64,000 nucleotides of DNA, taken from positions 2,666,001 to 2,730,000 of the forward strand of contig CM106586.1 of assembly GCA_048013815.1 (NCBI GenBank). The letters are read 5' to 3'. Below the pieces are notes generated by a model. It ran no database searches. It had not been told where the DNA came from and saw nothing but the letters and a program-made list of their open reading frames with translations. This DNA comes from Setoptus koraiensis. Lineage: Eukaryota; Animalia; Arthropoda. This document shows positions 2,054 through 31,474 of this stretch, piece after piece (position 1 is the first letter of the stretch; each line of letters begins with the position of its first letter). Both the position numbers and the translations under genes were made by a program.

Positions 2054-3793
2054 TTAACTTGGGGTTTTGCGATCTTCATTACAACTTTCTCCATTTGGTC
2101 CGGGTCGCAGTATCTGGTCGAAAACAGGCTTAGCCATCTCAAGACTAACACGACCAGCCGTCGTATCACTCAATTTTTGCATCAATATTTTCATATGACG
2201 GGTTTCTCCTGTTTTCGCATATTTTTTTGAAACGCCCTTCATACTTTCAATCACTTTTCTACAGAGTTGCTCTACCTCTTTGATATCATTGATTTGCAGC
2301 CATCCAAAACTTTCAGACAATTCTTTAGGCTCGCGTCGCTCCCTGTTGAAGACATACAACTTGATTAGCTCATAACCGATACAGTACGAGATAGATCTTT
2401 CCTCAACTAAATCTACAATCTGCGCAAAATATCTTGGTTGAAGCCCTATTCTAACGGCGCTGCCCTCAGCAAATGAGACATCGTCTAGTATGCCTTTGGC
2501 ATCTATATCCAATAAGTCTTTTCCGTGCAACAAGAACTTCGCCATAGAGTCCAAACTTTTGCATCTACTGAATCTGTGAGCCTCTAAGAGGAAATCCTTC
2601 ATACTATCAACCGAGGTAATATACTTGACCAAGTCCATAGAAAGTCCATACTGAGCAGCTAATTCCATGGCTTCTTCAAAGGGTCGTTTACTGAGTGTTT
2701 GTTCTAAGTTTAATGATTCATACTCAGTTGTATTTATCGGGGGTAAGCTTGGCTCTGGAAAATATCGGTAGTCTATTGATTCTTCTTTTTTTCTTAACAA
2801 TACAGATTTACCAGTTTTTGTATCAAATGATCGAGTTTCACGTTCCACCCTTTCGCCCGACAGAAGTAGTTGCCCTTGCCTAAAGATCTCATGCTCGATA
2901 CCTCGATTTAGAGATCGCAAGGAATTGAGATTCTTAAGCTCAACACGACCAGTTCCATCAAACCTTTGCCCGTCAATAGAATCTATTGATATATTGGCAT
3001 CTACACGCAACGATCCCTCTTCTAGCTGACAGCTGCAAGTTCCTATTGATTTCAAGATAGTTATGAGTTCAGTCAATACAGAAGTTGCTTCATGCTGGTC
3101 TTTTAAATCTGGCTCAAATACAATCTCCATAAGGGCGACGCCAGACCTATTGAAATCCACGAGACTAAAGTCTTTTCTTTGGCCATCATGAAATGTATTT
3201 ACATCATGGAAAGATCTAGCAGAATCTTGCTCGAGTTGTATTTGTTTTATCTTGGACCTTTTAATGTAAGGTTGAAATATTCTGTCTTCATTTTGTTGTG
3301 CCCTGAAAAATTGAACAAGATCATATGATTGAGAGCTGTGAGCCCTACTATACGGTGTCACTATGCAGTCGATGTAACCATCTGTGGCAATAGGTTTGTG
3401 GTATTGTGTCAATTGGTATCCGGCAGGTAAGTCGCTATAATAGTAATGTTTTCGATCAAAATGTGACTCCTGCTGAATAATACAATTTAATGCCAATGCG
3501 GTCCTGATAGCTGATACAACACACTGTTTATTGAGAGATGGTAGTGTTCCTGGCAACGATATATCAAATAAATCTAGCTGAGAATTGGGTGGCGCGAGAT
3601 ATTTTGTACCTCCGCGGCTAAATAATTTAGAATTGGCCTGTATCTGGGCATGTATCTCCAGGCCAACTTTGGCCTCTAGCGATTTCAATTGTTGTTGATG
3701 TTTGTCACAATTGTGACGATTGTGTAAAGTCCCCAGCCTATAAATTGGCTTGATTCTTTTTGTATGTGAAAAGATCAGGTTAGGAGTAAACAT
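2054..3793 (-). CDS. GATB: Mitochondrial Glu-tRNA(Gln) amidotransferase subunit B, single exon, about 579 aa from the first ATG
   Basis: VGLEIHAQI, FDRKHYYYSDLPAGYQLTQ, QIQLEQDS, DFNRSGVALMEIV, EGSLRVDANIS and RVELKNLNS motifs. The ORF track starts at a TTG (3844); the first ATG is at 3793. Confidence 0.93.
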   Translation of the reverse strand: MFTPNLIFSHTKRIKPIYRLGTLHNRHNCDKHQQQLKSLEAKVGLEIHAQIQANSKLFSRGGTKYLAPPNSQLDLFDISLPGTLPSLNKQCVVSAIRTALALNCIIQQESHFDRKHYYYSDLPAGYQLTQYHKPIATDGYIDCIVTPYSRAHSSQSYDLVQFFRAQQNEDRIFQPYIKRSKIKQIQLEQDSARSFHDVNTFHDGQRKDFSLVDFNRSGVALMEIVFEPDLKDQHEATSVLTELITILKSIGTCSCQLEEGSLRVDANISIDSIDGQRFDGTGRVELKNLNSLRSLNRGIEHEIFRQGQLLLSGERVERETRSFDTKTGKSVLLRKKEESIDYRYFPEPSLPPINTTEYESLNLEQTLSKRPFEEAMELAAQYGLSMDLVKYITSVDSMKDFLLEAHRFSRCKSLDSMAKFLLHGKDLLDIDAKGILDDVSFAEGSAVRIGLQPRYFAQIVDLVEERSISYCIGYELIKLYVFNRERREPKELSESFGWLQINDIKEVEQLCRKVIESMKGVSKKYAKTGETRHMKILMQKLSDTTAGRVSLEMAKPVFDQILRPGPNGESCNEDRKTPS

Positions 3794-4072
3794 TATAATT
3801 ACCCGATATTTTTTTGCTGATATGTTATAAGGGGTGGTCGCCAATATTTTGGCGAGTTACTAAAGCAACTGGACCTAGTGGATACAACAAGCAAGAATCT
3901 TCAAATAGAAATCAAGCGAAATGGATCACCTCGCTCACATTAAAAAACCAGCTGATTGGACCAAAACACTCATCCCACAAAAGCCCGAGGCAATGACTGA
4001 AAAAGAAATAGATGCGAACTTAAAGGAAGGCACTAGCCTGGTCTTGTATAAGAATGATTTAATTACACATAT

Positions 4073-9163: not shown

Positions 9164-11389
9164 TCATTTCATCTTAACTCGAAAGCGTTCATAATCTTTT
9201 GCTGAGCACATCGGAGTCTCAACCGGCAATATCCTGTTAAACTTATTGTAGTCAATGATTGTTTGCGCATAAGGACCGTAACCCTGTGTGGATATGATAG
9301 GCTCAAATCTGTATCCCCATTTGACTTCACTGGGAAGATAAGATGTTCTAACTTGAATTGACTGACCAGTTGATTCCACAGTACCTTCTATGACAGTTAT
9401 AATTTCAAATTTGAAATTCGCCAGTTGCTCGGAGTTCATTTCATAGAATAAGCTGTCTCTGTCGATTATGTGTACTATGGTTAGTGGCCAAATTAAAAGA
9501 AGATTGTTCCTTGCGTCATCTATTTTAACATCCAGTTGATGGTGATAGAAGGGAATTATTTCACCTTCATTGGTCAGTTTTTGACTGACCAATGAGGCGC
9601 GTATCGTTGCCCCTATGATATGTGATTTGCTCCTTACGTCGCCAACCCTGAATGTTAAACACATTTGATCATCCCTCAGGCACACTGTGGCATATTTACT
9701 AAACATTATAGTCTATATTTATTGATGGATGCAAATGATAAGAGGTGAGCATGAGGAAAGTAAATTAGCCACGTGCTTTCTGCTACATTCAGCCAATTCA
9801 ATTAGTTTGACTCGCTTGCTTACCTGAGACCTCTTAGCGGGTCGAGATAATTTTGCGAATACCATACCAACAATCAGACATTCTACTACAACTCCGAAGA
9901 TTAGTTGTGAACAAAATATTATTATGGCACCTGGGCATTCTACGCTGATTATTCTTGAACCGAAACCAAGTGTTGATTGAGTTTCTATAGAAAATAAAAG
10001 TGCAGCTGAAAAAGAATGTACGTTAACTATGCACGGCTTCCAATTTGGATCATTATCGTGTGACAGATCATCATGAATATATAATACAATATACCATATT
10101 GCTGCAAAGAATATCCATGAGAATACAAAACCCAACGAGGCCGCAAGCAGATTGTATCTCCACTTAATATCTATCATAGTTGTGAATAGATCTCTGAAGT
10201 ATTGTCGCCTATCTATATTGTCTATGTTAAGATTGACGGCACCATTTTTTCCTACCAATCTAGGCAGAGGAGCCGTCTTAGTGCTACCCGCTGTAACTGT
10301 TGTTATAGTTCCACCAACTCCTGCCACTGTAGCCGGTATAGATTGATGAATTTCCGATGTACGCTGATTGTGCGACAGTATATTATTATTGATTGCGTCA
10401 ATATTAGTTAGATTACTGTTGTGGTTGTTGTAAGTAGTAGTGATAGTTGTAGTAGTTGTAGGTGGATAGGTAAAGCCTTCAAAATGCACGATACTATTAG
10501 CTCGTTGTTGTAGATGACTTCCGATGATGTTGTTGCTATCACTGCCAATGACATTAGCATCGTGTTTCACATGTTCAATAGAGGCTTTAAGGTTAGCTAT
10601 ATCGTCGTCATTAGGATCGGCTAAAGTGTCATCTGCATGGTTATTGTTGATGTTGTTGTTGTTATCATTACTGATGTGATTATTGTTATTATGTAAGAGA
10701 TGACGCTGTTCAACATGATTGTCATCATCATCTTCATCATCATTATTATTAATATGTTCGCGGTGATTGGCCAATGATACCATGTTTAAATTATTTTCCT
10801 GTAAATATCTAGCACCATTGGTATCATCCCTAACATTGAGCCTTTGCAGACATTGATTTAGTGTAACATTAATCAATTTTTTTTCCAAACGCATGTTTAT
10901 CTGTTGCTGTGGGTCCTGATAAGAATTATCATCGCAAGCACATTGATCATTTAATTGTGGACTATCTACCGAATAAGACATCAAACTCTTGGATGATTCA
11001 TTGAAATCGAGTTGCTGTTGTTGTTGACTTGAAGGATTAAAGTCATCATTATTTTTTAAAGTTTTAGTATTAGTTTCTCCCAATGTTTGATGGTGTGTAT
11101 TTCCATTATAAAACTGGTCGGTGTTGTTATTGTTGTTGTTATTAACGAGGGTATGACCAAATGATTGAGAGGAGGATGCTGAGGGTGTAAGCGATGATGA
11201 GGATTTCTGTTGTTTGTGTCGATCAAAATTGGATGCTGAAGATGAAGAAGTTGAACAATCTGACTCAAGTGATGATAACAATAATGTTGAAGTAGTTTCA
11301 GTTGAAATCTGTGTGTGATATGTTTGTTGGTGTTGCTGTTCTTGATTAATACAATTTCCCTGTAAGTTTTTATCTTTCTGGGTGGGCAT
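9164..11389 (-). CDS. Inward-rectifier K+ channel; two coding exons (11389..9824, 9712..9164), about 704 aa, with a long low-complexity N-terminus
   Basis: RYFRDLFTTMIDIKWRY, FLFSIETQ-type pore loop (LLFSIETQSTLGFG), VFAKLSRP, WPLTIVHIID and SYLPSEVKWGYRF. A phase-0 GTAAG...ATAG intron at 9823..9713 joins KRSQ to TIMFSKYA. Confidence 0.92.
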
Positions 11390-20391: not shown

Positions 20392-21894
20392 TCAGTTCAT
20401 TATTGACAGATATAATTTCCTTGGCGAGGCCAACAGCAGCGGCGATGTGAGCGCCGATTTGAGGATGCCCGTAGTTGGTGTTGTAGTTGTTGAGCCTGGC
20501 GAGCTGGAGGTGTCGTTGAGATGATTAGGTGGTGACTGCAATGCCGCAATTAGTGCCGAGGCTTGGGGCGTTTTTGAATCTATTGGCGGCGATATACATG
20601 TGAGACCATTGAGTTGTTGTCGCTGTTGTTGTTGCATGTGATGATGATGAATTGGCGATATGGCACCAGTGAGAGTGTTCAATAGATGCTGATGAGGATG
20701 AGATGCTGACGATGGCGAGGATGCTGCTGAGGCGGTGGTTGTAGTGGTGGTAGTAGTGGTGGTTGTGGTGCTAATGGAGCTGGTTGTGTGTTGTTGTTGC
20801 TGTTGGTTGTTGGCAGCGTGCAGACTAGAATTAGTGCTACCACGGGTTGTTGTGGTGGTGGTAGTTGTGTCTGTGGAGCTTGTTGAGGAACTAGAAGAGC
20901 TGGAGCTAGAGGAAGGCGACGACGACGACGACGAGCTTGCTCTCGATTGATTAGACTTTTTGTGTTTCTTGTATTTGACTTTGTACATGTTGTAAACGGC
21001 GCCCGAGTTTCGTCCGCCGGGCATTCTGTCCTCTCTGACTGCGGCCAGCACCATGCCTTGGCGCAAACATTTCTGGAAGCGGCACGATTGACAGCGATTC
21101 CTCTGTTGTTTTGTTATGACACATTTGTCTTGGCTGACACAAGTGTAAACGCGCTTGTTTTGCACCGTTCTCTTGAAGAAGCCCTTGCAACCCTCGCAAG
21201 TTATAATGCCATAATGCAATCCGGTTGCCTTGTCCTCGCATATCATGCAAATCATCACCTGATTTCCGTTTTGTTGCTGGCTGGCCTGTTGCTGCTGATT
21301 GGCGGGGTCCATGAGTGCGGGATCCTGATGATTGTGATTGAATTGTTGTTGACTAGCGGATGTTGTTGTGGCGGTTGCGTGCGACGATGACGGCGCGCCC
21401 CCATTGGAGGTGGCCGTCGTTGTTATGGATGGCGGCGGTGTTGACACCATCAGTTTGTTGGCAACGGTTGCACAACCGTTTGTTGTTGTTGTTGTTGTTT
21501 TTGATTTGTTGATGTTGTTGTTGTTGTTGTCGTGCTGATGATGTTGATCGTGTTGTTGGTCTACGCACATGGGAACAACTGAATTATTGGTGGCGGCAGC
21601 TACCGACGATGGCGACAATGATAACGATGATGCCGACGACGATGATGAGCTAGATGAGAGCGTCGACGATAGCGATGACACCGACGACGTTGACGACAAC
21701 GACGACGTTCGCCTGCTGCCGGACGACAAATCTAGACACTGATTCATCCATGAGGGGGGCGATTGCGACAAATTGTAGCCGTTGTTTGTGTTGCCGTAAT
21801 TGAGCTGATTGTGGCCCAATTCGGCGACACTCAATGAGGCCAGTGTGGCGGTCATTGAGGATTTTCTCTTTTTTAGAGGCAGCCGTTGTTCCAT
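20392..21894 (-). CDS. Hr4: Miniature HR4 paralog, 500 aa from ATG, intact ORF, DBD only
   Basis: cacaccATGG start, [11 protein letters not shown], a C4 zinc-finger DBD identical to that of the main copy, and the same terminal [20 protein letters not shown]-stop. Whether it is expressed is unknown. Confidence 0.75.
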
Positions 21895-22651
21895 GGTGTG
21901 ATGTGACGACAAAATGCAATCGGATGCAATTGTGATAACCTTGAGATTGGCCAGATTTTGCTGTTTGAATAAAATATTTTTAATGGAAGCTATTGAAATA
22001 ATATCATTACTAACTGAGCACCGTAGTGTGAGTGTGTGTGTGTTGTGGCGTCGATGTTTACCCGAGCTAGCCAAAATTAGCACTGATGCTGCTGAGCGTT
22101 CAGTCGCAGCAGACAACAACTGCTGCTAGTTGCTAGTCGCAGAATGAGATCACCAGAAGTTGCACAACTTATAACTGTTAACGTTATTGTTACGTAACGC
22201 ATACCCTTAACTTTCAATGATCATGCTGCGAGGGGGAAGGAATGGGGGCGGGGTGGAGAGAGCGAGAGAGAGAGAGAGAGAGAGAGTTCAATAGTTGTTT
22301 TTAGTTCACCACACCATGGCACAAATAGCCCCTGGTGTCAAGGAACTCAACTACAGCTATGGCATGACCTTTTGAGACTGTATGAGGTGCTTGGCATTGA
22401 CACTAACGCTCACACAGACGCACGCACCAACTAAAGAAAGGCTTATAGTGAGACAAACGGGCACGCACACAGTCGAGCGCTCAATGTTACGTAATCAGGC
22501 CGCGCGCACACACACACACACACTGCAAAAAAGCCTCACTGTGACTCATCTTGTGCGTCTGTCACGTTGAGTTGAGTCGCTACTTGTTGTGAGACTCACG
22601 CGGACAACAACAGCAGCAGCGACAACAACGACGGCGACAACAACAGCAACG

Positions 22652-22775: not shown

Positions 22776-23950
22776 GGTGAGAATGTGAAGTAGCAATGAC
22801 CTTTGAGCTAGTTTTGTTGATCTAGCCACAGTGAGGAGGCTCTGGCGCGATGCACAACAGATATCACTGACACTTGCTCCAGAATCATGCTATGTGACAA
22901 ATGTCATTGAATCCATTGGCCGATCATTGATACATTGCCATGATTTTTTGCTACTCGAGCCTCACCGATCAAACTTTCATCACATCGTCTCTAATGGCGC
23001 CATGTCGCTATGATGGCGCAATTGTTCATTTAATTGTAACGTTATTTGTATGCCACCAATACTGACAACTTGTTAATATAATGACAATGCAATTGCCATG
23101 ACTCAATCGATTGTGTGCCCACCTAAATATTTATTGAGTTGACCAACAAACAATTTTAAGCAAGCACCAGATTACGTTACAGTTTTATACTGCAAACACC
23201 CTGTCATAAACTCGATAAACGCAATAAATCTCTACTCTGCTCTCTGCAACTCCTATCTCACATTCTCTTCCGTCGTCATGCAACCACAATATTCTTATTC
23301 TTTACTCTATCATCACGCCTGACAATTCGCTCACATTGTAATTTCCAAAGTCTCTATTTCAAGGTCCGATTCCGGCCGAAAGGTGGCTACCAAATGTGTC
23401 ACAGTTGAAAACATTCATAGCACTGACTATTGATGTTATCAATATTCTGTTTGAAACCTGATATAAGACCTCATATAAGCGGTTAATCAGGCGAGATATA
23501 TTATGCTATCAGCGTCACAATATGGTTCATCTGAAATGCAAGAGAATGGAGATTAACGAATGTTGTCAGCTAACGAGAGATCCATTTGTGCTCAGTTAGG
23601 TTGCAATCAAAACGAAAAAGGAAGCATTTTCGTTACGAGAATGTAGAATGGACGAGAAGACACTCAAGCTAGGTCCACAAAATGAACAGCCTTGCATCAA
23701 AAATGAAATAATGTTAACTTTCCATCGAAAGATTGGCTACAACGCCAACAATCAATGGGCACAAATTTAGCATATCCGGCCAATGGCAGGCCGACCAGGT
23801 ATCTCACTAAAGCGCCAAAATCTTTGTCCGCCAAAGCTGTCTTCGCTAAGCAATTGAAAGCTCCTCTATGCCGACTGGAAAGGACAGGAAGCTAACGAAT
23901 ACTACGGTCTTGCTCTAAATTATTTAGCCCAAAGGCTACAAGATAGGATG

Positions 23951-24679
23951 TTTCAACCTTACATTAAAAGGTCCAAGATAAAACAAATACAACTCGAGCA
24001 AGATTCTGCTAGATCTTTGCATGATGTAAATACATTTCATGATGGCCAAAGAAAAGACTTTAGTCTCGTGGATTTCAATAGGTCTGGCGTCGCCCTTATG
24101 GAGATTGTATTTGAGCCAGATTTAAAAGACCAGCATGAAGCAACTTCTGTATTGACTGAACTCATAACTATCTTGAAATCAATAGGAACTTGCAGCTGTC
24201 AGCTAGAAGAGGGATCGTTGCGTGTAGATGCCAATATATCAATAGATTCTATTGACGGGCAAAGGTTTGATGGAACTGGTCGTGTTGAGCTTAAGAATCT
24301 CAATTCTTTGCGATCTCTAAATCGAGGTATCGAGCATGAGATCTTTAGGCAAGGGCAACTACTTCTGTCGGGCGAAAGGGTGGAACGTGAAACTCGATCA
24401 TTTGATACAAAAACTGGTAAATCTGTATTGTTAAGAAAAAAAGAAGAATCAATAGACTACCGATATTTTCCAGAGCCAAGCTTACCCCCGATAAATACAA
24501 CTGAGTATGAATCATTAAACTTAGAACAAACACTCAGTAAACGACCCTTTGAAGAAGCCATGGAATTAGCTGCTCAGTATGGACTTTCTATGGACTTGGT
24601 CAAGTATATTACCTCGGTTGATAGTATGAAGGATTTCCTCTTAGAGGCTCACAGATTCAGTAGATGCAAAAGTTTGGAC
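23951..24679 (+). pseudogene. Inverted, near-identical 729-bp internal fragment of GatB (source 2549..3277)
   Basis: The translation matches GatB from FQPYIKRS to RCKSLD. I found one difference by eye (24019, F to L). No native start or stop. Confidence 0.92.
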
Positions 24680-24849
24680 ACCAAATGTCCCATTCGTTGA
24701 GTGAAAGACCAATATCGTTCTCTATCAGTTGTGAACTAATCAAGTAGCAGTTCTTCGGCAATGGATAGTAAGTAAGAAAGTACGAATAACCTTTGTTCAA
24801 AAGGTATGCAGAAACATGATATATGAAAAAATTGATGGAGAAACCCTGA

Positions 24850-24961
24850 AACTGTCCTGTTCGATCAGTCTAAACAGGATATTGACAATCTAGCACGCGG
24901 CAAATTGCATTGTCGGGGTGCACCTCATCACCTGAAGAATCAACAAGTACTAACTGCACTA
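24850..24961 (+). pseudogene. Inverted diverged scribble fragment 1 (source 5873..5765)
   Basis: tcgatcag.ctaaacagga.attgacaatc...cacgcgg.aaattgcat...cacctcatcacctgaagaatcaacaagt. Confidence 0.8.
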
Positions 24962-25481
24962 TCAAGGAACCCTACTTAGGTGTTGGACTCCTATTGGGCT
25001 ATGCTTAGCCTATCTGTTCTCGGCTAGTCGAGCTGAGCACGAATACGCTAGTCAAATACCTGTTTTTTTGTCGTTTTTCTGCAATATTCATAGTAAAAAT
25101 TTCATTGTTTCTGACACTCTCACACCTTATTAAGACAATCTGAACAGTTCGGCCCCCCAGTGTAATGACCTTTTGCACAGTTATTACCGGCACCGAATTG
25201 TCCGGATTTTATCGAGTCCATGGTCCATCTGACCATGGACTCGATGTCCACCCGCTTCCAACTACCTGCTGGAGGTGGGAGTAGTTAAAAACTTACTTTT
25301 TTTACTTAAAGGGTGTTCCATTCCAAACGCACATTAGAACTGTTATTTAGTTTTCCTGATGTGTTTGATAGATTTTTTGGGTGTTGTAGCGACTAGGTCC
25401 CCACTCAGAATTTGATGAAACTTCACAAACGGGCTCCGTAGGGGCCCCATATCACAAATTGAGTAGGTATTTGTGGTGTTG
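24962..25481. mobile_element. 520-bp insertion splitting the scribble pseudo-fragment, flanked by a duplicated TA
   Basis: The source reads gcacTAagtaaag; the copy reads gcacTA-[520 bp]-TAagtaaag. No convincing terminal inverted repeats. Internal 15-bp-stem hairpin. Confidence 0.4.
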
Positions 25482-25817
25482 TAAGTAAAGAAGACAAGCG
25501 TAAAGTTGAGTTACTTGCAAAATATAAGAAAAGAATTATCTACATCGACAGTCGACTTACACCAAAAGGTCCCACTGAAGCTGCCGGTGTTAAAGTGAAG
25601 GATAAGATCTTGGCGGTGAATGATAAAGAATTTTATGAGGGCATAGATCATGGGACCGCTGTGGAGATTTTCAAAAAGGTCAAATCAAATTGTAAAGACG
25701 AAGCAGATGAGGACGAGTCGCAAGATGACGCATTTGTACAGCCGACAGACTATTTAACTAATAGTACAACTGTTAAAAAACAGAATTTATCGGAAGACAC
25801 TTTGCCTAACACGAATA
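25482..25817 (+). pseudogene. Inverted scribble fragment 2 (PDZ1 region, source 5766..5317, two internal deletions)
   Basis: KDKILAVNDKEFYEGIDH.TAVEIFKKVKSNC and DEADEDESQDDAFVQPTD match scribble. Confidence 0.88.
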
Positions 25818-26607
25818 TTTCTGTGAGATGTAGGAATCGGCCAAAAAATGGCGAATTGCGTTCAGAGAAACCATTGAACAATGTCGTGACATCATCTCGC
25901 CGAATATACAATCCAACACAAGCTAGAATATGCTTCGAAGTGAAAACGGGCGCCCCACGTAGGTATTGTGTGAGAGCCAAAGTCGGATAGTAGACGGATG
26001 AGTTGGGCATTCGCAACAATGGGGCGATTGTCGATGAAGTATGATATACTTGTATCATGTATGAAATCAAATAAAATGAAAAGTGCACGTTGATGAAACG
26101 AGCCAGAGCCGCGAGAAAATTTGTTACGCGTCTAGAGATAAATGATAATTATTACTCAAGGAGTTTTAAACTCACAAGAGCAATCTCTCTATTTATAGTT
26201 AGCTTATTTACAAATTATCAATAGCATTGCACTAAAATGTGATGATAAGTGTGTATGTTTATAACAATGTTTTCGTTGTTTGTTTGCAACCATCCGCTGA
26301 TTGACCACTTATATCAATATCAAATTGAATAAATTAATAGCGGCTCAAATTGTTGGCTAGTATGGTGGAGCGGCAGTTCATATACATAGCATACATTTGA
26401 TATTTGTAATTGTTGTTGAGTTGTTGCCAATAATAGTTGACAACTTGTAATGTAATGTATAATATATGATATTGCATTGTTTGCATCTATTCTATCTACG
26501 CTTGCCATCAGTTTGGTCGGTCGATCGAGTTTGATTGAATTCATTTGATTTTATTATTAGTAAACTTCATTTTAAATCAAGTGTCAACAATCAGTGCAAG
26601 CGAGCAA

Positions 26608-29600
26608 TCAGTTCATGATTGTTACGTACAACTTTCTTGGCGAGGCCAATTGCAGCGGCGACGTGAGCGCCGATTTAAGGATGGTGCTGCCCGTGGTGGA
26701 TGCCGTTGTTGTTGGCGTTGTAGTTGTAGTGGATGTGGCCGCCGTGGTTCCGTTTGTCAAATTAGCCGGACTTGCATTTGTGGTCAACGGGGGCGTTGTT
26801 GAGCCCGGCGAGCTGGAGGCCGTGGAAGCGGAAGTGCTATTGCCGGCACTGTTGCTGTCATTGTGATCGTTGTTGTCTTGGCCGTTTAGTCTGGGCGACA
26901 TTGGTTTAGGTGAGCCATTGGAACTGGGTGGACCTGTTGTCGATGTGCTGTTCAGTGCAGTTAATGAGTTTGAAATGTTCATTAGCGACGGCTTAACATC
27001 TTGATTCGACGATGACAATGGCGATGTTATCGAGGAAGAGGAACAAGTGGATGATATCGACGACATGGATGAAGTAGACAACTTTTTGGTTGAGTTGCGC
27101 TGTTGCGGCTGTTGAGTATCATTGAGATAATGGTTGTTGTTTGTTGGTGGCGATTGCAATGACGCAATTAATGCTGAGGATGGCGGTGATTTTGAATTTA
27201 TTGAGCTACTGTTAGACTTTGGTGACATCAACAATGACGACGACGACGACGACGACGACGAACCGGCCGCGTTAGACGATACAATTGGGGGCGATATAGA
27301 CGTGAGACCATTGAGTTGTTGTTGTCGCTGTTGTTGTTGCATGTGATGATGATGGATTGGCGATATGGCACCAGTGAGAGTGTTCAATAGATGCTGGTGA
27401 GGATGAGATGCTGACGATGGCGAGGATGCTGCTGAGGCGGTGGTTGTAGTGGTGGTAGTAGTGGTGGTTGTGGTGCTAGACGGGCAGCTGGTTGTGTGTT
27501 GTTGTTGTTGCTGTTGGTTGACCAGCGCGTTGTCGTTGGCGGTCTGCGGACTAGAATTAGCACTTGTATCACTTACTGTCATTTGCTCCAATTTGATATT
27601 GCTGCCTTGGCCATTGGCGTTGTTGTTGTTATGTTGTTGTTGTGACATAATTTGACCATTGGGCGGCGACGCAATTGGCGACAGCACACTCGTGGGCGAC
27701 GACATCGGGTACGACTGGCCAGTCTGGTTGTTGTTGTTGTGGTTGTTGTTCAACTGATTGCTGGCACTGCTGCTGGTAGTGGTGGTAGTTGTGTCTATGG
27801 ATGAGGTCGATTGTGTCGGCGACGAATTCACCGATTTCATCGAGGCGCCAGAACTGGAATTGCAACTGGAACTAGATGAGCTAGAGCTAGACGACGAGCT
27901 AGATGACGAGCTCGACGACGACGAGCTTGCTCTCGATTGATTAGACTTTTTGTGTTTCTTGTATTTGACTTTGTACATGTTGTAAACGGCGCCCGAGTTT
28001 CGTCCGCCGGGCATTCTGTCCTCTCTGACTGCGGCCAGCACCATGCCTTGGCGCAAACATTTCTGGAAGCGGCACGATTGACAGCGATTCCTCTGTTGTT
28101 TTGTTATGACACATTTGTCTTGGCTGACACAAGTGTAAACGCGCTTGTTTTGCACCGTTCTCTTGAAGAAGCCCTTGCAACCCTCGCAAGTTATAATGCC
28201 ATAATGCAATCCGGTTGCCTTGTCCTCGCATATCATGCAAATCATCACCTGATTTCCGTTTTGTTGCTGGCTGGCCTGTTGCTGCTGATTGGCGGGGTCC
28301 ATGAGTGCGGGATCCTGATGATTGTGATTGAATTGTTGTTGACTAGCGGATGTTGTTGTGGCGGTTGCGTGCGACGACGACGGCGCGCCCCCATTGGAGG
28401 TGGCCGTCGTTGTTATGGATGGCGGCGGTGTTGACACCATCAGTTTGTTGACGACGGTTGCACAACCGTTTGTTGTTGCTGTTGTTGTTGTTGTTCCGTT
28501 GTTGTTGCTGTTGTTGACATGAGAAAGTGTCGTAACAGGCGTAGACGGTGCAGAGGTCGCACAGACCGGTGAGGAGGAACTCAATTCCATTAGTGTGGGC
28601 AATTGTTGTTGTTGTCCATTTGTTTTATTTTGTTGCTGTTGTTGTTGACTTAGATTGTGTGTTAAGTGATGCTGTAAATGCTGATGATGTTGGTGGTGGT
28701 TGTTGTTGTGGTTGTGCTGATGATGCTGATGGTGCTGCTGTAATTGGTGTTGCAATTGTTGTTGCAGATGGTGGTGCGCATGATCGTGCTGCTGATTGGG
28801 TGCGGGATCTACGCACATTGGAACAACAAGATTGTTGTTGTTGTTTTCGTTGTTTTGATCTATCGATGATCTGTTGCTGTTGCTAGTGAGATGCAACTGC
28901 AATTGACTGTGATGTTGCTGCTGATGCTGATGATGATGATGATTGCTCGTCAAATGGTGATGCAACGCCGATTGACCAAATGTTGTTGTCTGTCCCGTAT
29001 TTATGGATTGCTGCTGCTGCTGTTGCTGTTGGTGCAATGGAGATATTGAATTTCTCCTCTGTTGTTGCTGCTGTTGTTGTTGTTGGTGGTGGTGCAATTG
29101 ACTTTGGTGGTGGCCCAAATGCAAATGATGCAAATTATGATGATTATTGTTGCTGTTGTTAGATGTCAATTGCGACGTGAGATGCGGATTGTTGGCGCTG
29201 GTGGCGCTACTGTTGTTGCTGTTGGTATTGAGTAATTGAACAGGTTGCAACAGTTGCGATACCAATTGTGAATTGTTTGATCCGGTTGTCGATGTTGTGG
29301 TCGTGGTCGATGAGTGACTTTGGTGGTTCTGATATTGGTTGTTGCTGTTGTTTGTCAATGATGAAGATTTCAATGGCGACGATGTGGCAGCACACAAATT
29401 ATGCAAATGATGTTGCTGGTGCGACGATGATACTGAACTGAGTGTGACTGGAGTCGGGGGCGACTGCTGGCCCCCAATTAGATGCAGCGATTGCAACTGT
29501 GACAACTGTTGTTGTTGTTGTTGTTGTTGTTGCTGCTGTTGCTGTTGCTGCTGTGATTGCTGCATTCCCGTTGACATAATCAACGATGAGGCCGATGAAG

Positions 29601-30606
29601 ACAATGTCGACGACGATGTTGCAATCGACGATACTTGCACCTGATTCACAACGGCGGCCAGGGCAACCGCGGCAGCCGATGAGGGCGACAGTGATAATGA
29701 TGATGTCGACGACGACGACGACGACGAGCTAGATGAGGCCGACGAAAGCGACGACACAGAGGCAGACAATGACGAGGAGCCTGTGGATCCAACGGAGGAG
29801 GTCGACGACAGCGACGACGTTCGCTTGCTGCCAGACGACAAGTCGAGACATTGATTCATCCAAGCGGGGGGCGATTGTGACAGAGTGTGGCCGTTGTTTG
29901 TGTTGTGGTGATGATTGTGGTGCGGATGTTGCTGTTGGTGGTGGTGATGATGGTGGTTGTGGTGTTGGTGTTGAGAGGCTGCGGCGGCCGCTGCGGCACT
30001 TGCAACCGCAGCTGCTGTCACTGCATCGGCAACCAACTGACCGTGATGGTCAATCGATGCGACGTGTTGTTGCTGTTGTTGTTGTGCATTTAAATGTGTT
30101 GCGTTAATTAGATTGTGTTGCTGCTGTTGCTGCGAAGCGGCCACGTTGGATAAATTTATTAAATTGTTCAATTGTTCATTGGTGGCGGCGGCGGCGGCCG
30201 CGGCTTGATCCACCTGAAATTTGCACTGGCCAGCAGCGGCCTGATTGTTGTTTAGATGATGTTGTTGTTGTTGTGCTAATTGTTGTTGGCGCATTTGCTG
30301 CGTCTGGTGCAGAGCTTGCTGATAGTGATGATAGGCGAGCGCGTTCGGAGGTGAGGGCGACATGCTCTGTCTGTTGCCGTTTTGCTGCTGTTGTTGCATA
30401 ACTTTCTTGAGAGTTTCCATAAGTGTGACAGAGGTGCCAGAGGGGCCAGAATGGTTCACCGGTGACTTGTTAGCCCTGGCGCTGTCCAGTTGGTGGCCCA
30501 GCGCAACCACCGATGAGGCCCCCAGTGAGGCCAGTGTGGCCGTCATAATGGAAGCGGGGTTTGTTGTTGAGGATTTTCTCTTCTTTAGTGGCAGTCGCTT
30601 TTCCAT
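26608..30606 (-). CDS. Hr4: Nuclear receptor HR4 (NR6A/GCNF family), single ORF of 1332 aa from ATG; Q/H/N/S/T-rich, DBD present, no LBD in this ORF
   Basis: [31 protein letters not shown]...[28 protein letters not shown] is the HR4 DBD plus C-terminal extension. caccATGG at 30606; the ORF track start at 30648 is a TTG. Confidence 0.9.
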
Positions 30607-31474
30607 GGTGATGCGATGTGATTGGCGATGTGATTGGCGATAATGCAAATGATTTATATTATATAATCGATGATTATATAATGATATTGATTGATGCTAA
30701 TACGATTATATTATTAGATAATATACTGATGCGACTCTGTGTTTGCCCGAGCTTGCCAAAATACACACTGACTGGCTGTTGGCTTGCTGGCTAACAGACA
30801 ACTGCTAACACTGCCAATGAGATCACCAGAAGTTGCGCAACTTCTAACTGTTAACTGTGTGTATTGTTGTTTCTATACTTGTCTCTCTCTATACTTGTAA
30901 TCACACCCTTAACTTTCAATGATCATACTGTGTGTGTGTTACATAAGCGTATAAGCCATGTTATGCTACTTACCAGTGTAGCTGTTAGCCAAGTGAGAGG
31001 GAGAGAGTTCAATAGTTGTTTTTAGTTCACCGCACCATGGCACAAATAGCGGCCCCCTGGTGCAAAGAACCTGTACTAGTGAAAGGCATAACCTTTTGAG
31101 ACTCGCCGAGATGTATGGCATTGACACTAACGCACACACAAACAAACGCACCAACTGACGAAAGGCTTACGACGAGACAAACGAGCACGCACACAGTCGA
31201 GCGCTCAATGTTACGTAACCTGGCTAACACACATTGCGGTTAAGCCTCGCAGTGACTCATCTTGTGCGTGTGTCACGCTGAGTCGCTCACTTTTGCTTGT
31301 GTTATGTAATGTCTGTTGTGTATTGCGTGTATGTCTGACAGTGTTGTCTGTGGTGATACTACAGACACTGCAAAGCACAATTGAGCCAACAACAGATAGG
31401 GGCACAGAGGCGAGCAAATGTAAAAATAGATGCAAGCGTGTAAATACAAGAAACTTCTCCAATGTTGTTACCAA

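What the first reader, a model, noticed from the sequence alone, without database searches (positions are those of the whole stretch)
26608..30606. HR4 ends without a ligand-binding domain
Seen: after the DBD there are about 440 aa of S/T/Q/N-rich sequence, then a stop. No LBD-like frame was found downstream on the minus strand before Kir. The paralog conserves the peptide and stop at amino-acid level but destroys the only plausible donor (GTACGT becomes ATATCT), so the stop looks real. Established: insect HR4 and vertebrate GCNF have an LBD. I recall LBD loss in several nuclear receptors being reported for an eriophyoid mite genome; that needs verifying and would lower the novelty.
Basis: partly seen in the sequence, partly recalled or inferred. 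Interest (0 to 1): 0.7.

Follow-up and report, generated by a model that had tools for sequence, protein, structure and literature searches.

The report
Mite HR4 receptor lacking ligand domain
This compact gall-mite-type genome carries a real, selection-maintained copy of the moulting-cascade nuclear receptor HR4 that keeps its DNA-binding domain but has truly lost its ligand-binding domain; the same loss was already published for HR4 of the eriophyoid mite Aculops lycopersici, so this extends a known case.

Summary
Window 26608-30606 (-) is one uninterrupted 1332-codon gene. It has an HR4-type zinc-finger DNA-binding domain, a 440-aa tail that is 74% S/T/N/Q/H/P/G, and a stop 18 residues after ILKSAL, a hinge motif that in other arthropod HR4s lies between the DNA-binding and ligand-binding domains.

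No ligand-binding domain (LBD) was found:
- not with Pfam PF00104;
- not with an HR4-specific LBD profile that scores left-out LBDs from tardigrade to fish at 125-367 bits (best window frame 8 bits);
- not with a degenerate motif scan of the whole 48.8-Mb genome.

All ten LBDs in the genome sit just downstream of other receptors' DNA-binding domains.

The tandem 500-aa paralogue (20392-21894) ends the same way. Its last 24 codons differ mostly at synonymous sites (omega about 0.08), and similarity stops at the stop codon. It also lacks the only candidate splice donor.

Independent contigs confirm the assembly at the stop. No run on record as RNA holds this stretch, so splicing was not tested directly.

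Greenhalgh et al. 2020 (eLife) already list HR4 among six LBD-less receptors of Aculops lycopersici. Contig lengths suggest this genome is Setoptus koraiensis, a second eriophyoid lineage. Earlier notes of this scan had already flagged the paralogue and other LBD-less receptors in this genome.

The parts
26608..30606 (-). HR4 (NR6A-type) gene, long copy: a single-exon CDS of 1332 codons plus the stop
   Evidence: Uninterrupted ORF. Best protein hits are arthropod HR4. The N-terminal motif [11 protein letters not shown] matches the orthologues' MSLF.DLKLKRRK start.
28039..28242 (-). C4 zinc-finger DNA-binding domain
   Evidence: Pfam zf-C4, 103 bits. Genome scan places it at C2:2694039-2694242. 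The 92-codon core is identical in DNA to the paralogue.
27949..28038 (-). HR4/GCNF-type C-terminal extension of the DBD ([30 protein letters not shown])
   Evidence: The same sequence, apart from one M/L exchange (AVYNMYK here, AVYNLYK there), is present in the mite HR4 orthologues read out. The next-best DBD in this genome is only 62% identical.
26611..27948 (-). Low-complexity S/T/N/Q/H-rich tail of about 440 aa that stands where hinge and LBD should be
   Evidence: Composition. No Pfam domain. No confident fold outside the DBD in a single-sequence model of the paralogue, which is weak evidence.
26665..26682 (-). ILKSAL, a pan-arthropod HR4 hinge motif; here it lies 18 residues before the stop
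   Evidence: The motif was found in most of 120 HR4 orthologues, always between DBD and LBD. It is kept in both copies.
26624..26629 (-). GTACGT, the only candidate splice donor near the end; most likely unused
   Evidence: Sequence. The paralogue has ATATCT here, and the 8 codons behind this site still evolve as coding sequence (Sd 5, Nd 2; p 0.003).
26608..26610 (-). Stop codon TGA
   Evidence: Sequence. Paralogue similarity ends one base past it, and the 90 nt downstream are 23/90 identical.
26550..26555 (-). AATAAA, a possible poly(A) signal 53-58 nt downstream of the stop
   Evidence: Read directly from the sequence; its use is inferred and was not tested.
20392..21894 (-). Tandem short HR4 paralogue (500 aa), also without an LBD and with the same C-terminal peptide
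   Evidence: Translation. Pfam finds zf-C4 only. Alignment to the long copy. Omega 0.02-0.13 in the conserved blocks.

Best explanation
This is the orthologue of the ecdysone-cascade nuclear receptor HR4 (NR6A group; DHR4 in Drosophila, GCNF in vertebrates). In this lineage its reading frame has been cut short inside what is one large DBD-hinge-LBD exon in a trombidiform relative. The protein keeps the HR4 N-terminal motifs, the zinc-finger DBD with its HR4-type extension, and the ILKSAL hinge motif. It then ends in a short lineage-specific peptide (...SPRKLY[VL][TS]IMN). Shown here: the truncation, the absence of any HR4-type LBD in the genome, and purifying selection on the new C-terminus in two diverged copies. 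Inferred: the protein acts as a ligand-independent, DBD-only transcription factor. It would bind HR4/GCNF-type extended half-sites or DR0 sites through the DBD plus extension. It would recruit partners through its long disordered Q/H/S/T-rich regions and conserved short motifs, not through an AF-2 surface. The loss most likely predates the split of the eriophyoid families, because Aculops lycopersici HR4 also lacks a predicted LBD.
For: Orthology:
- The DBD region is 85-92% identical to HR4 of mites, spiders, ticks and insects.
- Only two HR4-type DBDs exist in the genome, both in this window; the next best is 62% identical.
- The HR4-specific motifs are present.

No LBD:
- PF00104 searched over the genome in six frames gives 11 matches at 10 loci. 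None is in the window, and each lies within 10 kb downstream of another DBD on the same strand.
- The HR4-LBD profile A1 finds nothing in the genome (best 11.9 bits) or the window (8.2 bits). The same profile scores left-out HR4/GCNF LBDs at 125-367 bits, and most 45-aa tiles of them at E<1e-4.
- The P0034 LBD used as a query finds nothing.
- The degenerate VQWTKxLPFY pattern gives 1 hit, which contains a stop, against 4 and 2 hits for the control patterns.
- 100 kb sampled further downstream gives a best of 6 bits.

Selection on the end:
- The last 24 codons show Sd 9, Nd 3, dS 0.75, omega 0.08, p 0.0006.
- The 8 codons behind the candidate donor show Sd 5, Nd 2, p 0.003.
- Similarity between the copies ends at the stop.

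Other support:
- The assembly is confirmed by separately filed runs.
- In Dinothrombium the DBD, ILKSAL and the first half of the LBD lie in one exon.
- Literature: A. lycopersici HR4 has no predicted LBD (PMC7738191).
Against: There is no transcript evidence. No run on record as RNA holds the stretch, so use of the GTACGT donor in the long copy is excluded only indirectly.

The genome-wide profile search relies on a loose first look of unknown sensitivity.

Only half of the next 200 kb downstream could be fetched for an exhaustive scan.

The selection tests rest on few codons.

DNA binding and ligand-independent activity are inferred, not shown.

No eriophyoid orthologue sequence was available to test whether the stop position is shared.
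Confidence: 0.85

Rival explanations
1. The gene still has an LBD, encoded by one or more downstream exons reached from the GTACGT donor or another donor. These exons would be too diverged or too distant to be recognised.
For: GTACGT, 13 nt upstream of the stop codon, is a reasonable donor. Pfam does miss genuine HR4 LBDs in trombidiform mites: P0034 scores 20.4 bits, below the 23.5 cut-off, and P0006 scores nothing. No RNA data were available.
Against: The HR4-specific profile includes those trombidiform LBDs and detects tardigrade, mollusc and vertebrate ones, yet finds nothing in the window, in 100 kb sampled beyond it, or in the genome. There is no orphan LBD in the genome. The paralogue lacks the donor but keeps the peptide and the stop, and the codons behind the donor evolve as coding sequence. 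Six or more other genes lie in the 26 kb downstream, in a lineage whose published relative has a median intron of 170 bp and 84% intronless genes.
Confidence: 0.05
2. It is a decaying relic: after losing the LBD the gene is non-functional and is simply not yet disrupted.
For: The tail is low-complexity and differs greatly in length between the copies (440 against 180 aa). Expression is unproven.
Against: A 1332-codon frame stays open. The two copies have dS 0.6-1.8 in conserved blocks with omega 0.02-0.13. The HR4 motifs are kept at both ends. The DBD core is identical between the copies. The published A. lycopersici gene is also retained without an LBD.
Confidence: 0.05
3. The stop is an assembly or polishing artefact in a CLR-based assembly.
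For: The likely source assembly used noisy PacBio CLR reads polished with short reads.
Against: Contigs built from four public runs filed under four studies (X2 and X3 may be one data set filed twice) cover the stop and its flanks with zero differences. The paralogue has the same stop in a diverged sequence context.
Confidence: 0.01

Closest known systems
Aculops lycopersici HR4 (Greenhalgh et al. 2020, eLife 9:e56689, PMC7738191)
   Same: It is an eriophyoid HR4 orthologue reported with a DBD but no predicted LBD, one of six such receptors (E75, DSF, HR4, HR38, HR51, SVP).
   Different: That report rests on Pfam/CDD prediction only. It states that D. pteronyssinus and T. urticae HR4 also lacked a predicted LBD. 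Here the current D. pteronyssinus model has PF00104 at 38.6 bits, and trombidiform HR4s have clear LBDs that Pfam under-calls. The loss therefore looks eriophyoid-specific. This genome also has a tandem pair. I could not obtain the A. lycopersici sequence to compare the stop position.
Drosophila DHR4 / arthropod HR4 and vertebrate GCNF (NR6A1)
   Same: It shares the DBD and its extension, the N-terminal LKLKRRK-like motif, the CLDLS motif and the ILKSAL hinge motif. DHR4 acts in the ecdysone cascade and in timing steroid pulses (PMC3181225, abstract seen).
   Different: Canonical members carry a C-terminal LBD (PF00104 is listed for nearly all hits). This protein stops 18 residues after ILKSAL.
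NR0A-type DBD-only receptors (knirps, knirps-like, eagle; C. elegans odr-7); named from general knowledge
   Same: The architecture is the same: a nuclear-receptor zinc finger with no LBD, acting as a ligand-independent transcription factor.
   Different: The descent differs. This gene is an NR6A/HR4 orthologue by DBD, extension and motifs, not a member of the knirps group.
The tandem short HR4 paralogue at 20392-21894 (earlier scan note s1-356656)
   Same: It has the same motifs, an identical DBD core, and the same C-terminal peptide and stop.
   Different: It is 500 aa against 1332 aa because most low-complexity linkers are absent, and it has no GTACGT at the end.

Membership tests
HR4 / NR6A orthology group | C4 zinc-finger DBD closest to HR4/GCNF | tested here: met
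   zf-C4 scores 103 bits. The named top hits in the word search are almost all HR4 or NR6A1 (a few carry NR5A2-like or uninformative labels); mite, spider and insect HR4s are 85-92% identical over the DBD region.
HR4 / NR6A orthology group | HR4-type C-terminal extension of the DBD ([26 protein letters not shown]) | tested here: met
   It is present, differing from the mite HR4 orthologues read only by M for L in AVYNMYK. The next-best DBD in this genome is 62% identical.
HR4 / NR6A orthology group | HR4-specific linear motifs outside the DBD (N-terminal LKLKRRK-like, CLDLS, ILKSAL) | tested here: met
   All three are present in both copies. ILKSAL is found in most of 120 orthologues.
HR4 / NR6A orthology group | C-terminal ligand-binding domain (helices 3-12, LVQWTKxLPFY and KMFYVPF signatures) | tested here: not met
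   Nothing was found with PF00104, the HR4-LBD profile, a protein query or a degenerate pattern, in the window or the genome. The profile's reach was checked with controls.
Canonical nuclear receptor architecture (DBD + LBD) | Both domains in one polypeptide | tested here: not met
   DBD only. It is an HR4 by descent, but by structure it is a DBD-only receptor.
Functional transcription factor (expressed, binds DNA) | Transcript and DNA-binding activity | not testable with these tools
   No run on record as RNA holds the stretch. One low-depth run (X4) has a transcript-like patchy pattern and runs unspliced over the donor and the stop, but its kind is unknown.

The most novel reading that the evidence does not exclude
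The LBD was lost once at the base of Eriophyoidea, and the protein was re-terminated just behind ILKSAL. That would make this pan-arthropod hinge motif (an LxxAL, NR-box-like helix) plus the new SPRKLY..IMN peptide the effective C-terminal functional module. One possibility is that it docks HR4 onto the AF-2 surface of another receptor such as FTZ-F1, so that HR4 signalling no longer needs its own LBD. If true, the mite pair would be a natural minimal HR4 that shows which parts of HR4 are sufficient for its role in the moulting cascade.
Probability: 0.08. Interest if true: 0.55.

Novelty: new member of a known kind. Interest (0 to 1): 0.27.

Why it matters
It confirms, with tests stronger than domain prediction, that an ancient and otherwise universally two-domain receptor of the moulting cascade can persist under selection as a DBD-only factor.

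It suggests that this state is shared by two distant eriophyoid families. That inference rests on two things: the contig lengths point to Setoptus koraiensis, and the A. lycopersici report already exists.

It also corrects an impression left by the 2020 paper. Dust-mite and trombidiform HR4s do have LBDs, so the loss goes with eriophyoid genome streamlining and is not an acariform trait.

For annotation pipelines, it warns that PF00104 under-calls diverged HR4 LBDs. 'No Pfam LBD' therefore needs a family-specific profile before a loss is claimed.

Tried and rejected
1. RNA evidence. The look-up of sequencing runs returned no run on record as RNA. Read laying gave contigs only, which cannot show splicing or transcript ends. 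The transcript-like pattern of run X4 is suggestive but its kind is unknown.

2. A closer (eriophyoid) orthologue that might share the tail. Three word searches found only DBD-level matches (coverage 16-19% of DBD plus tail), so the age of the stop could not be tested by sequence. Many 'PF00105-only' hits, such as P0007-P0009, P0124 and P0125, appear to be first-exon or partial ORF calls and not LBD-less genes.

3. The supplementary tables of the eLife paper hold no searchable HR4 entry.

4. An exhaustive six-frame scan of 200 kb further downstream.

5. Telomere repeat check for eriophyoid identity. The contig starts carry no TTTGG arrays, so this was uninformative.

6. A single-sequence AlphaFold model of the paralogue. 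Mean pLDDT was 38.8 and only the DBD rose above 50, which is too poor to say more than 'no confident fold in the tail'.

Full report
**What is there**

The minus strand of window 26608-30648 carries a 1346-codon open frame. From the methionine at 30606 it encodes 1332 residues. The start, [11 protein letters not shown], resembles the N-terminus of mite HR4 orthologues (MSLF.DLKLKRRK).

Pfam finds a single domain, the nuclear-receptor C4 zinc finger, at window 28039-28242. It is followed by the HR4/GCNF-type extension [30 protein letters not shown]. After that come about 440 residues that are 74% S/T/N/Q/H/P/G and only 14% large hydrophobics. Twenty real HR4 ligand-binding domains have 27-41% large hydrophobics. 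The frame ends ...[24 protein letters not shown], with TGA at 26608-26610.

**Identity**

A word search with the DBD region returns HR4 of mites, spiders, ticks, crustaceans and insects at 85-92% identity, and NR6A1/GCNF of chordates lower down. The genome has about 18 receptor DBD loci. Only two are HR4-type, both in this window; the next best is 62% identical.

A motif survey of 120 orthologues shows that ILKSAL is a pan-arthropod HR4 motif. It always lies in the hinge between the DBD and the LBD. Here the protein stops 18 residues behind it.

**Is the ligand-binding domain really absent?**

Pfam alone is not a safe test. The Dinothrombium HR4 (P0006) and a related protein (P0034) have obvious LBDs (LCSIGDSIV.KLVQWTKKLPFY ... 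SKMFYVPFLL). Yet they score nothing, or 20.4 bits against a 23.5-bit cut-off, with PF00104.

I therefore built an HR4-specific LBD alignment of 20 sequences that includes these (A1), and ran the following checks.

- **Window.** With all filters off, the best of 3086 six-frame segments scores 8.2 bits (E 0.22), and it lies upstream of the gene.
- **Control.** In the same database, LBDs that were left out of the profile score 125-367 bits. These come from oribatid and dust mites, crustaceans (salmon louse, brine shrimp, a copepod), a tardigrade, a mollusc, amphioxus and fish. Most 45-aa tiles of them score E<1e-4.
- **Whole genome with A1.** The best hit is 11.9 bits.
- **Whole genome with one LBD as query.** The best hit is E 0.1.
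- **Degenerate pattern.** The invariant VQWTKxLPFY pattern with up to three mismatches gives one hit, which contains a stop codon. The reversed control patterns give 4 and 2 hits.
- **PF00104 over the genome.** It gives 11 matches at 10 loci. Each lies within 10 kb downstream of another receptor's DBD on the same strand, so no orphan LBD is left over for HR4.
- **Further downstream.** Half of the next 200 kb could be fetched and holds nothing (best 6 bits). The other half could not be fetched.

**The paralogue as a natural experiment**

About 4.5 kb downstream on the same strand (start codon at 21894, against the long copy's stop at 26608) lies a 500-aa copy, 20392-21894. It keeps the same islands: the N-terminal motif, the CLDLS motif, the DBD, two tail motifs and the C-terminal peptide. 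Most of the low-complexity linkers are missing.

The 92-codon DBD core is identical in DNA, which fits gene conversion. The other conserved blocks have dS 0.6-1.8 with omega 0.02-0.08, so the duplication is old and both copies are constrained.

| Stretch | Synonymous steps | Non-synonymous steps | Other figures | p |
|---|---|---|---|---|
| Last 24 codons | 9 | 3 | dS 0.75, omega 0.08 | 0.0006 |
| 8 codons behind the candidate donor | 5 | 2 | – | 0.003 |

The candidate donor GTACGT (26624-26629) reads ATATCT in the paralogue, while the peptide (RKLY[VL][TS]IMN) and the TGA are kept. BLASTN similarity ends one base past the stop, and the next 90 nt are 23/90 identical. This is the pattern expected if translation ends here in both genes.

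**Assembly and transcripts**

Contigs of three runs (X1, X2, X3) cover 25721-27223 without a single difference, and a fourth run (X4) covers 26585-27223 likewise. X2 and X3 are of equal size and give identical pieces, so they may be one data set filed twice. The stop is not a polishing error.

No run on record as RNA holds this stretch. Run X4 has low depth, no coverage of intergenic parts, and coverage of 26197-26515 at the same depth as the coding end. That looks like a transcriptome, and if it is one the message runs unspliced through the donor and the stop. Its kind is unknown, however, and contigs cannot prove it.

An AATAAA lies 53-58 nt past the stop.

**Origin of the truncation (inferred)**

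In Dinothrombium, one exon holds the DBD, ILKSAL and the first half of the LBD (protein residues 1-553). A single intron follows in the LBD. The stop in this genome therefore lies inside an ancestral exon and not at an exon boundary. That points to a nonsense mutation, frameshift or deletion event, followed by complete erosion of the downstream coding sequence.

**Which organism**

The two contigs measure 24,221,962 and 24,533,333 bases. The published Setoptus koraiensis assembly has two chromosomes and an N50 of 24.53 Mb, and it was annotated without RNA-seq (PMC11920263). The match in N50 makes this species the likely source, but that is an inference.

The receptor complement fits an eriophyoid pattern. 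It has a tandem pair of receptor genes, each with DBD and LBD (the paper reports two RXRs, but I did not identify these loci), and many DBDs without LBDs. The eLife paper and earlier scan notes on dsf and Hr38 in this genome describe the same pattern.

**Comparison with what is known**

Greenhalgh et al. 2020 (PMC7738191) state that no LBD was predicted for E75, DSF, HR4, HR38, HR51 and SVP of Aculops lycopersici. They add that for HR4 none was predicted in D. pteronyssinus or T. urticae either. The core finding is therefore published.

Three things are added here:
- The absence is shown by family-specific and genome-wide tests, not only by Pfam.
- Dust-mite HR4 does have an LBD in current models (38.6 bits), oribatid HR4s are listed with PF00104, and trombidiform HR4 has one that Pfam under-calls. 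The loss is therefore specific to the eriophyoid lineage.
- The end lies just behind a conserved hinge motif and is under selection in two diverged copies.

By architecture the protein resembles the DBD-only receptors of the knirps group. By descent it is an HR4.

**How it most likely works**

This section is inferred. The protein would be a constitutive, ligand-independent DNA-binding regulator using the HR4 DBD plus extension. Cofactor contacts would be supplied by conserved short motifs and long disordered Q/H/S/T-rich regions.

The role of DHR4 in the ecdysone cascade and in timing steroid pulses (PMC3181225) suggests that the mite genes still act in moulting control. This was not tested.

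**Verdict**

Novelty is low: this is a second lineage, and a better-proven case, of a published loss.

The scan had already noted the paralogue (s1-356656), the conversion pattern (s1-356697) and other LBD-less receptors of this genome (s1-338129, s1-330310). I reproduced the first two myself.

Noticed in passing
window 24949-25481 and 25300-25499: One contig in each of runs X1-X3 skips 533 bases here (8 other letters stand in their place), and word depth at 25300-25499 reaches about 13,000. This looks like a multi-copy repeat or transposon insertion that is polymorphic among samples.
   Followed up: no
window 23940-25817: DNA contigs of X1-X3 join 25817 back to 23940 ('goes back 1878'). This suggests another arrangement or another copy of this part of the mosaic between the two HR4 genes.
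   Followed up: no
window 23948-24700 (+) and 2054-3844 (-): An inverted fragment of GatB (GatB_N profile positions 110-273) lies between the two HR4 copies, while the complete GatB gene lies 20 kb away. Contigs branch exactly at 24679.
   Followed up: partly
window 9164-11389 (-): The Kir channel gene is split into two ORFs, IRK at 9719-11389 and IRK_C at 9164-9706, only 12 nt apart. This is either a very short intron or an in-frame interruption.
   Followed up: no
proteins P0006, P0034 (trombidiform-type HR4): Pfam PF00104 fails on genuine HR4 LBDs that carry long acidic insertions (no hit, and 20.4 bits against a 23.5-bit cut-off). This probably explains the published statement that T. urticae HR4 has no predicted LBD.
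   Followed up: partly
proteins P0124 and P0125 (one 14.9-kb ENA contig): Two HR4-like ORFs of an unnamed arthropod lie on the same contig, so tandem HR4 pairs occur outside this genome too.
   Followed up: no
genome G000: C1:23862558, C1:20267973, C1:13119095, C1:20062204, C2:8128081, C2:11329796: Six further receptor DBD loci have no PF00104 match nearby. This fits the published list of LBD-less receptors in A. lycopersici.
   Followed up: no
window 30816-30855 and 22143-22182: A 40-nt block upstream of both HR4 start codons is 95% identical. It may be a shared 5'UTR or promoter element.
   Followed up: no
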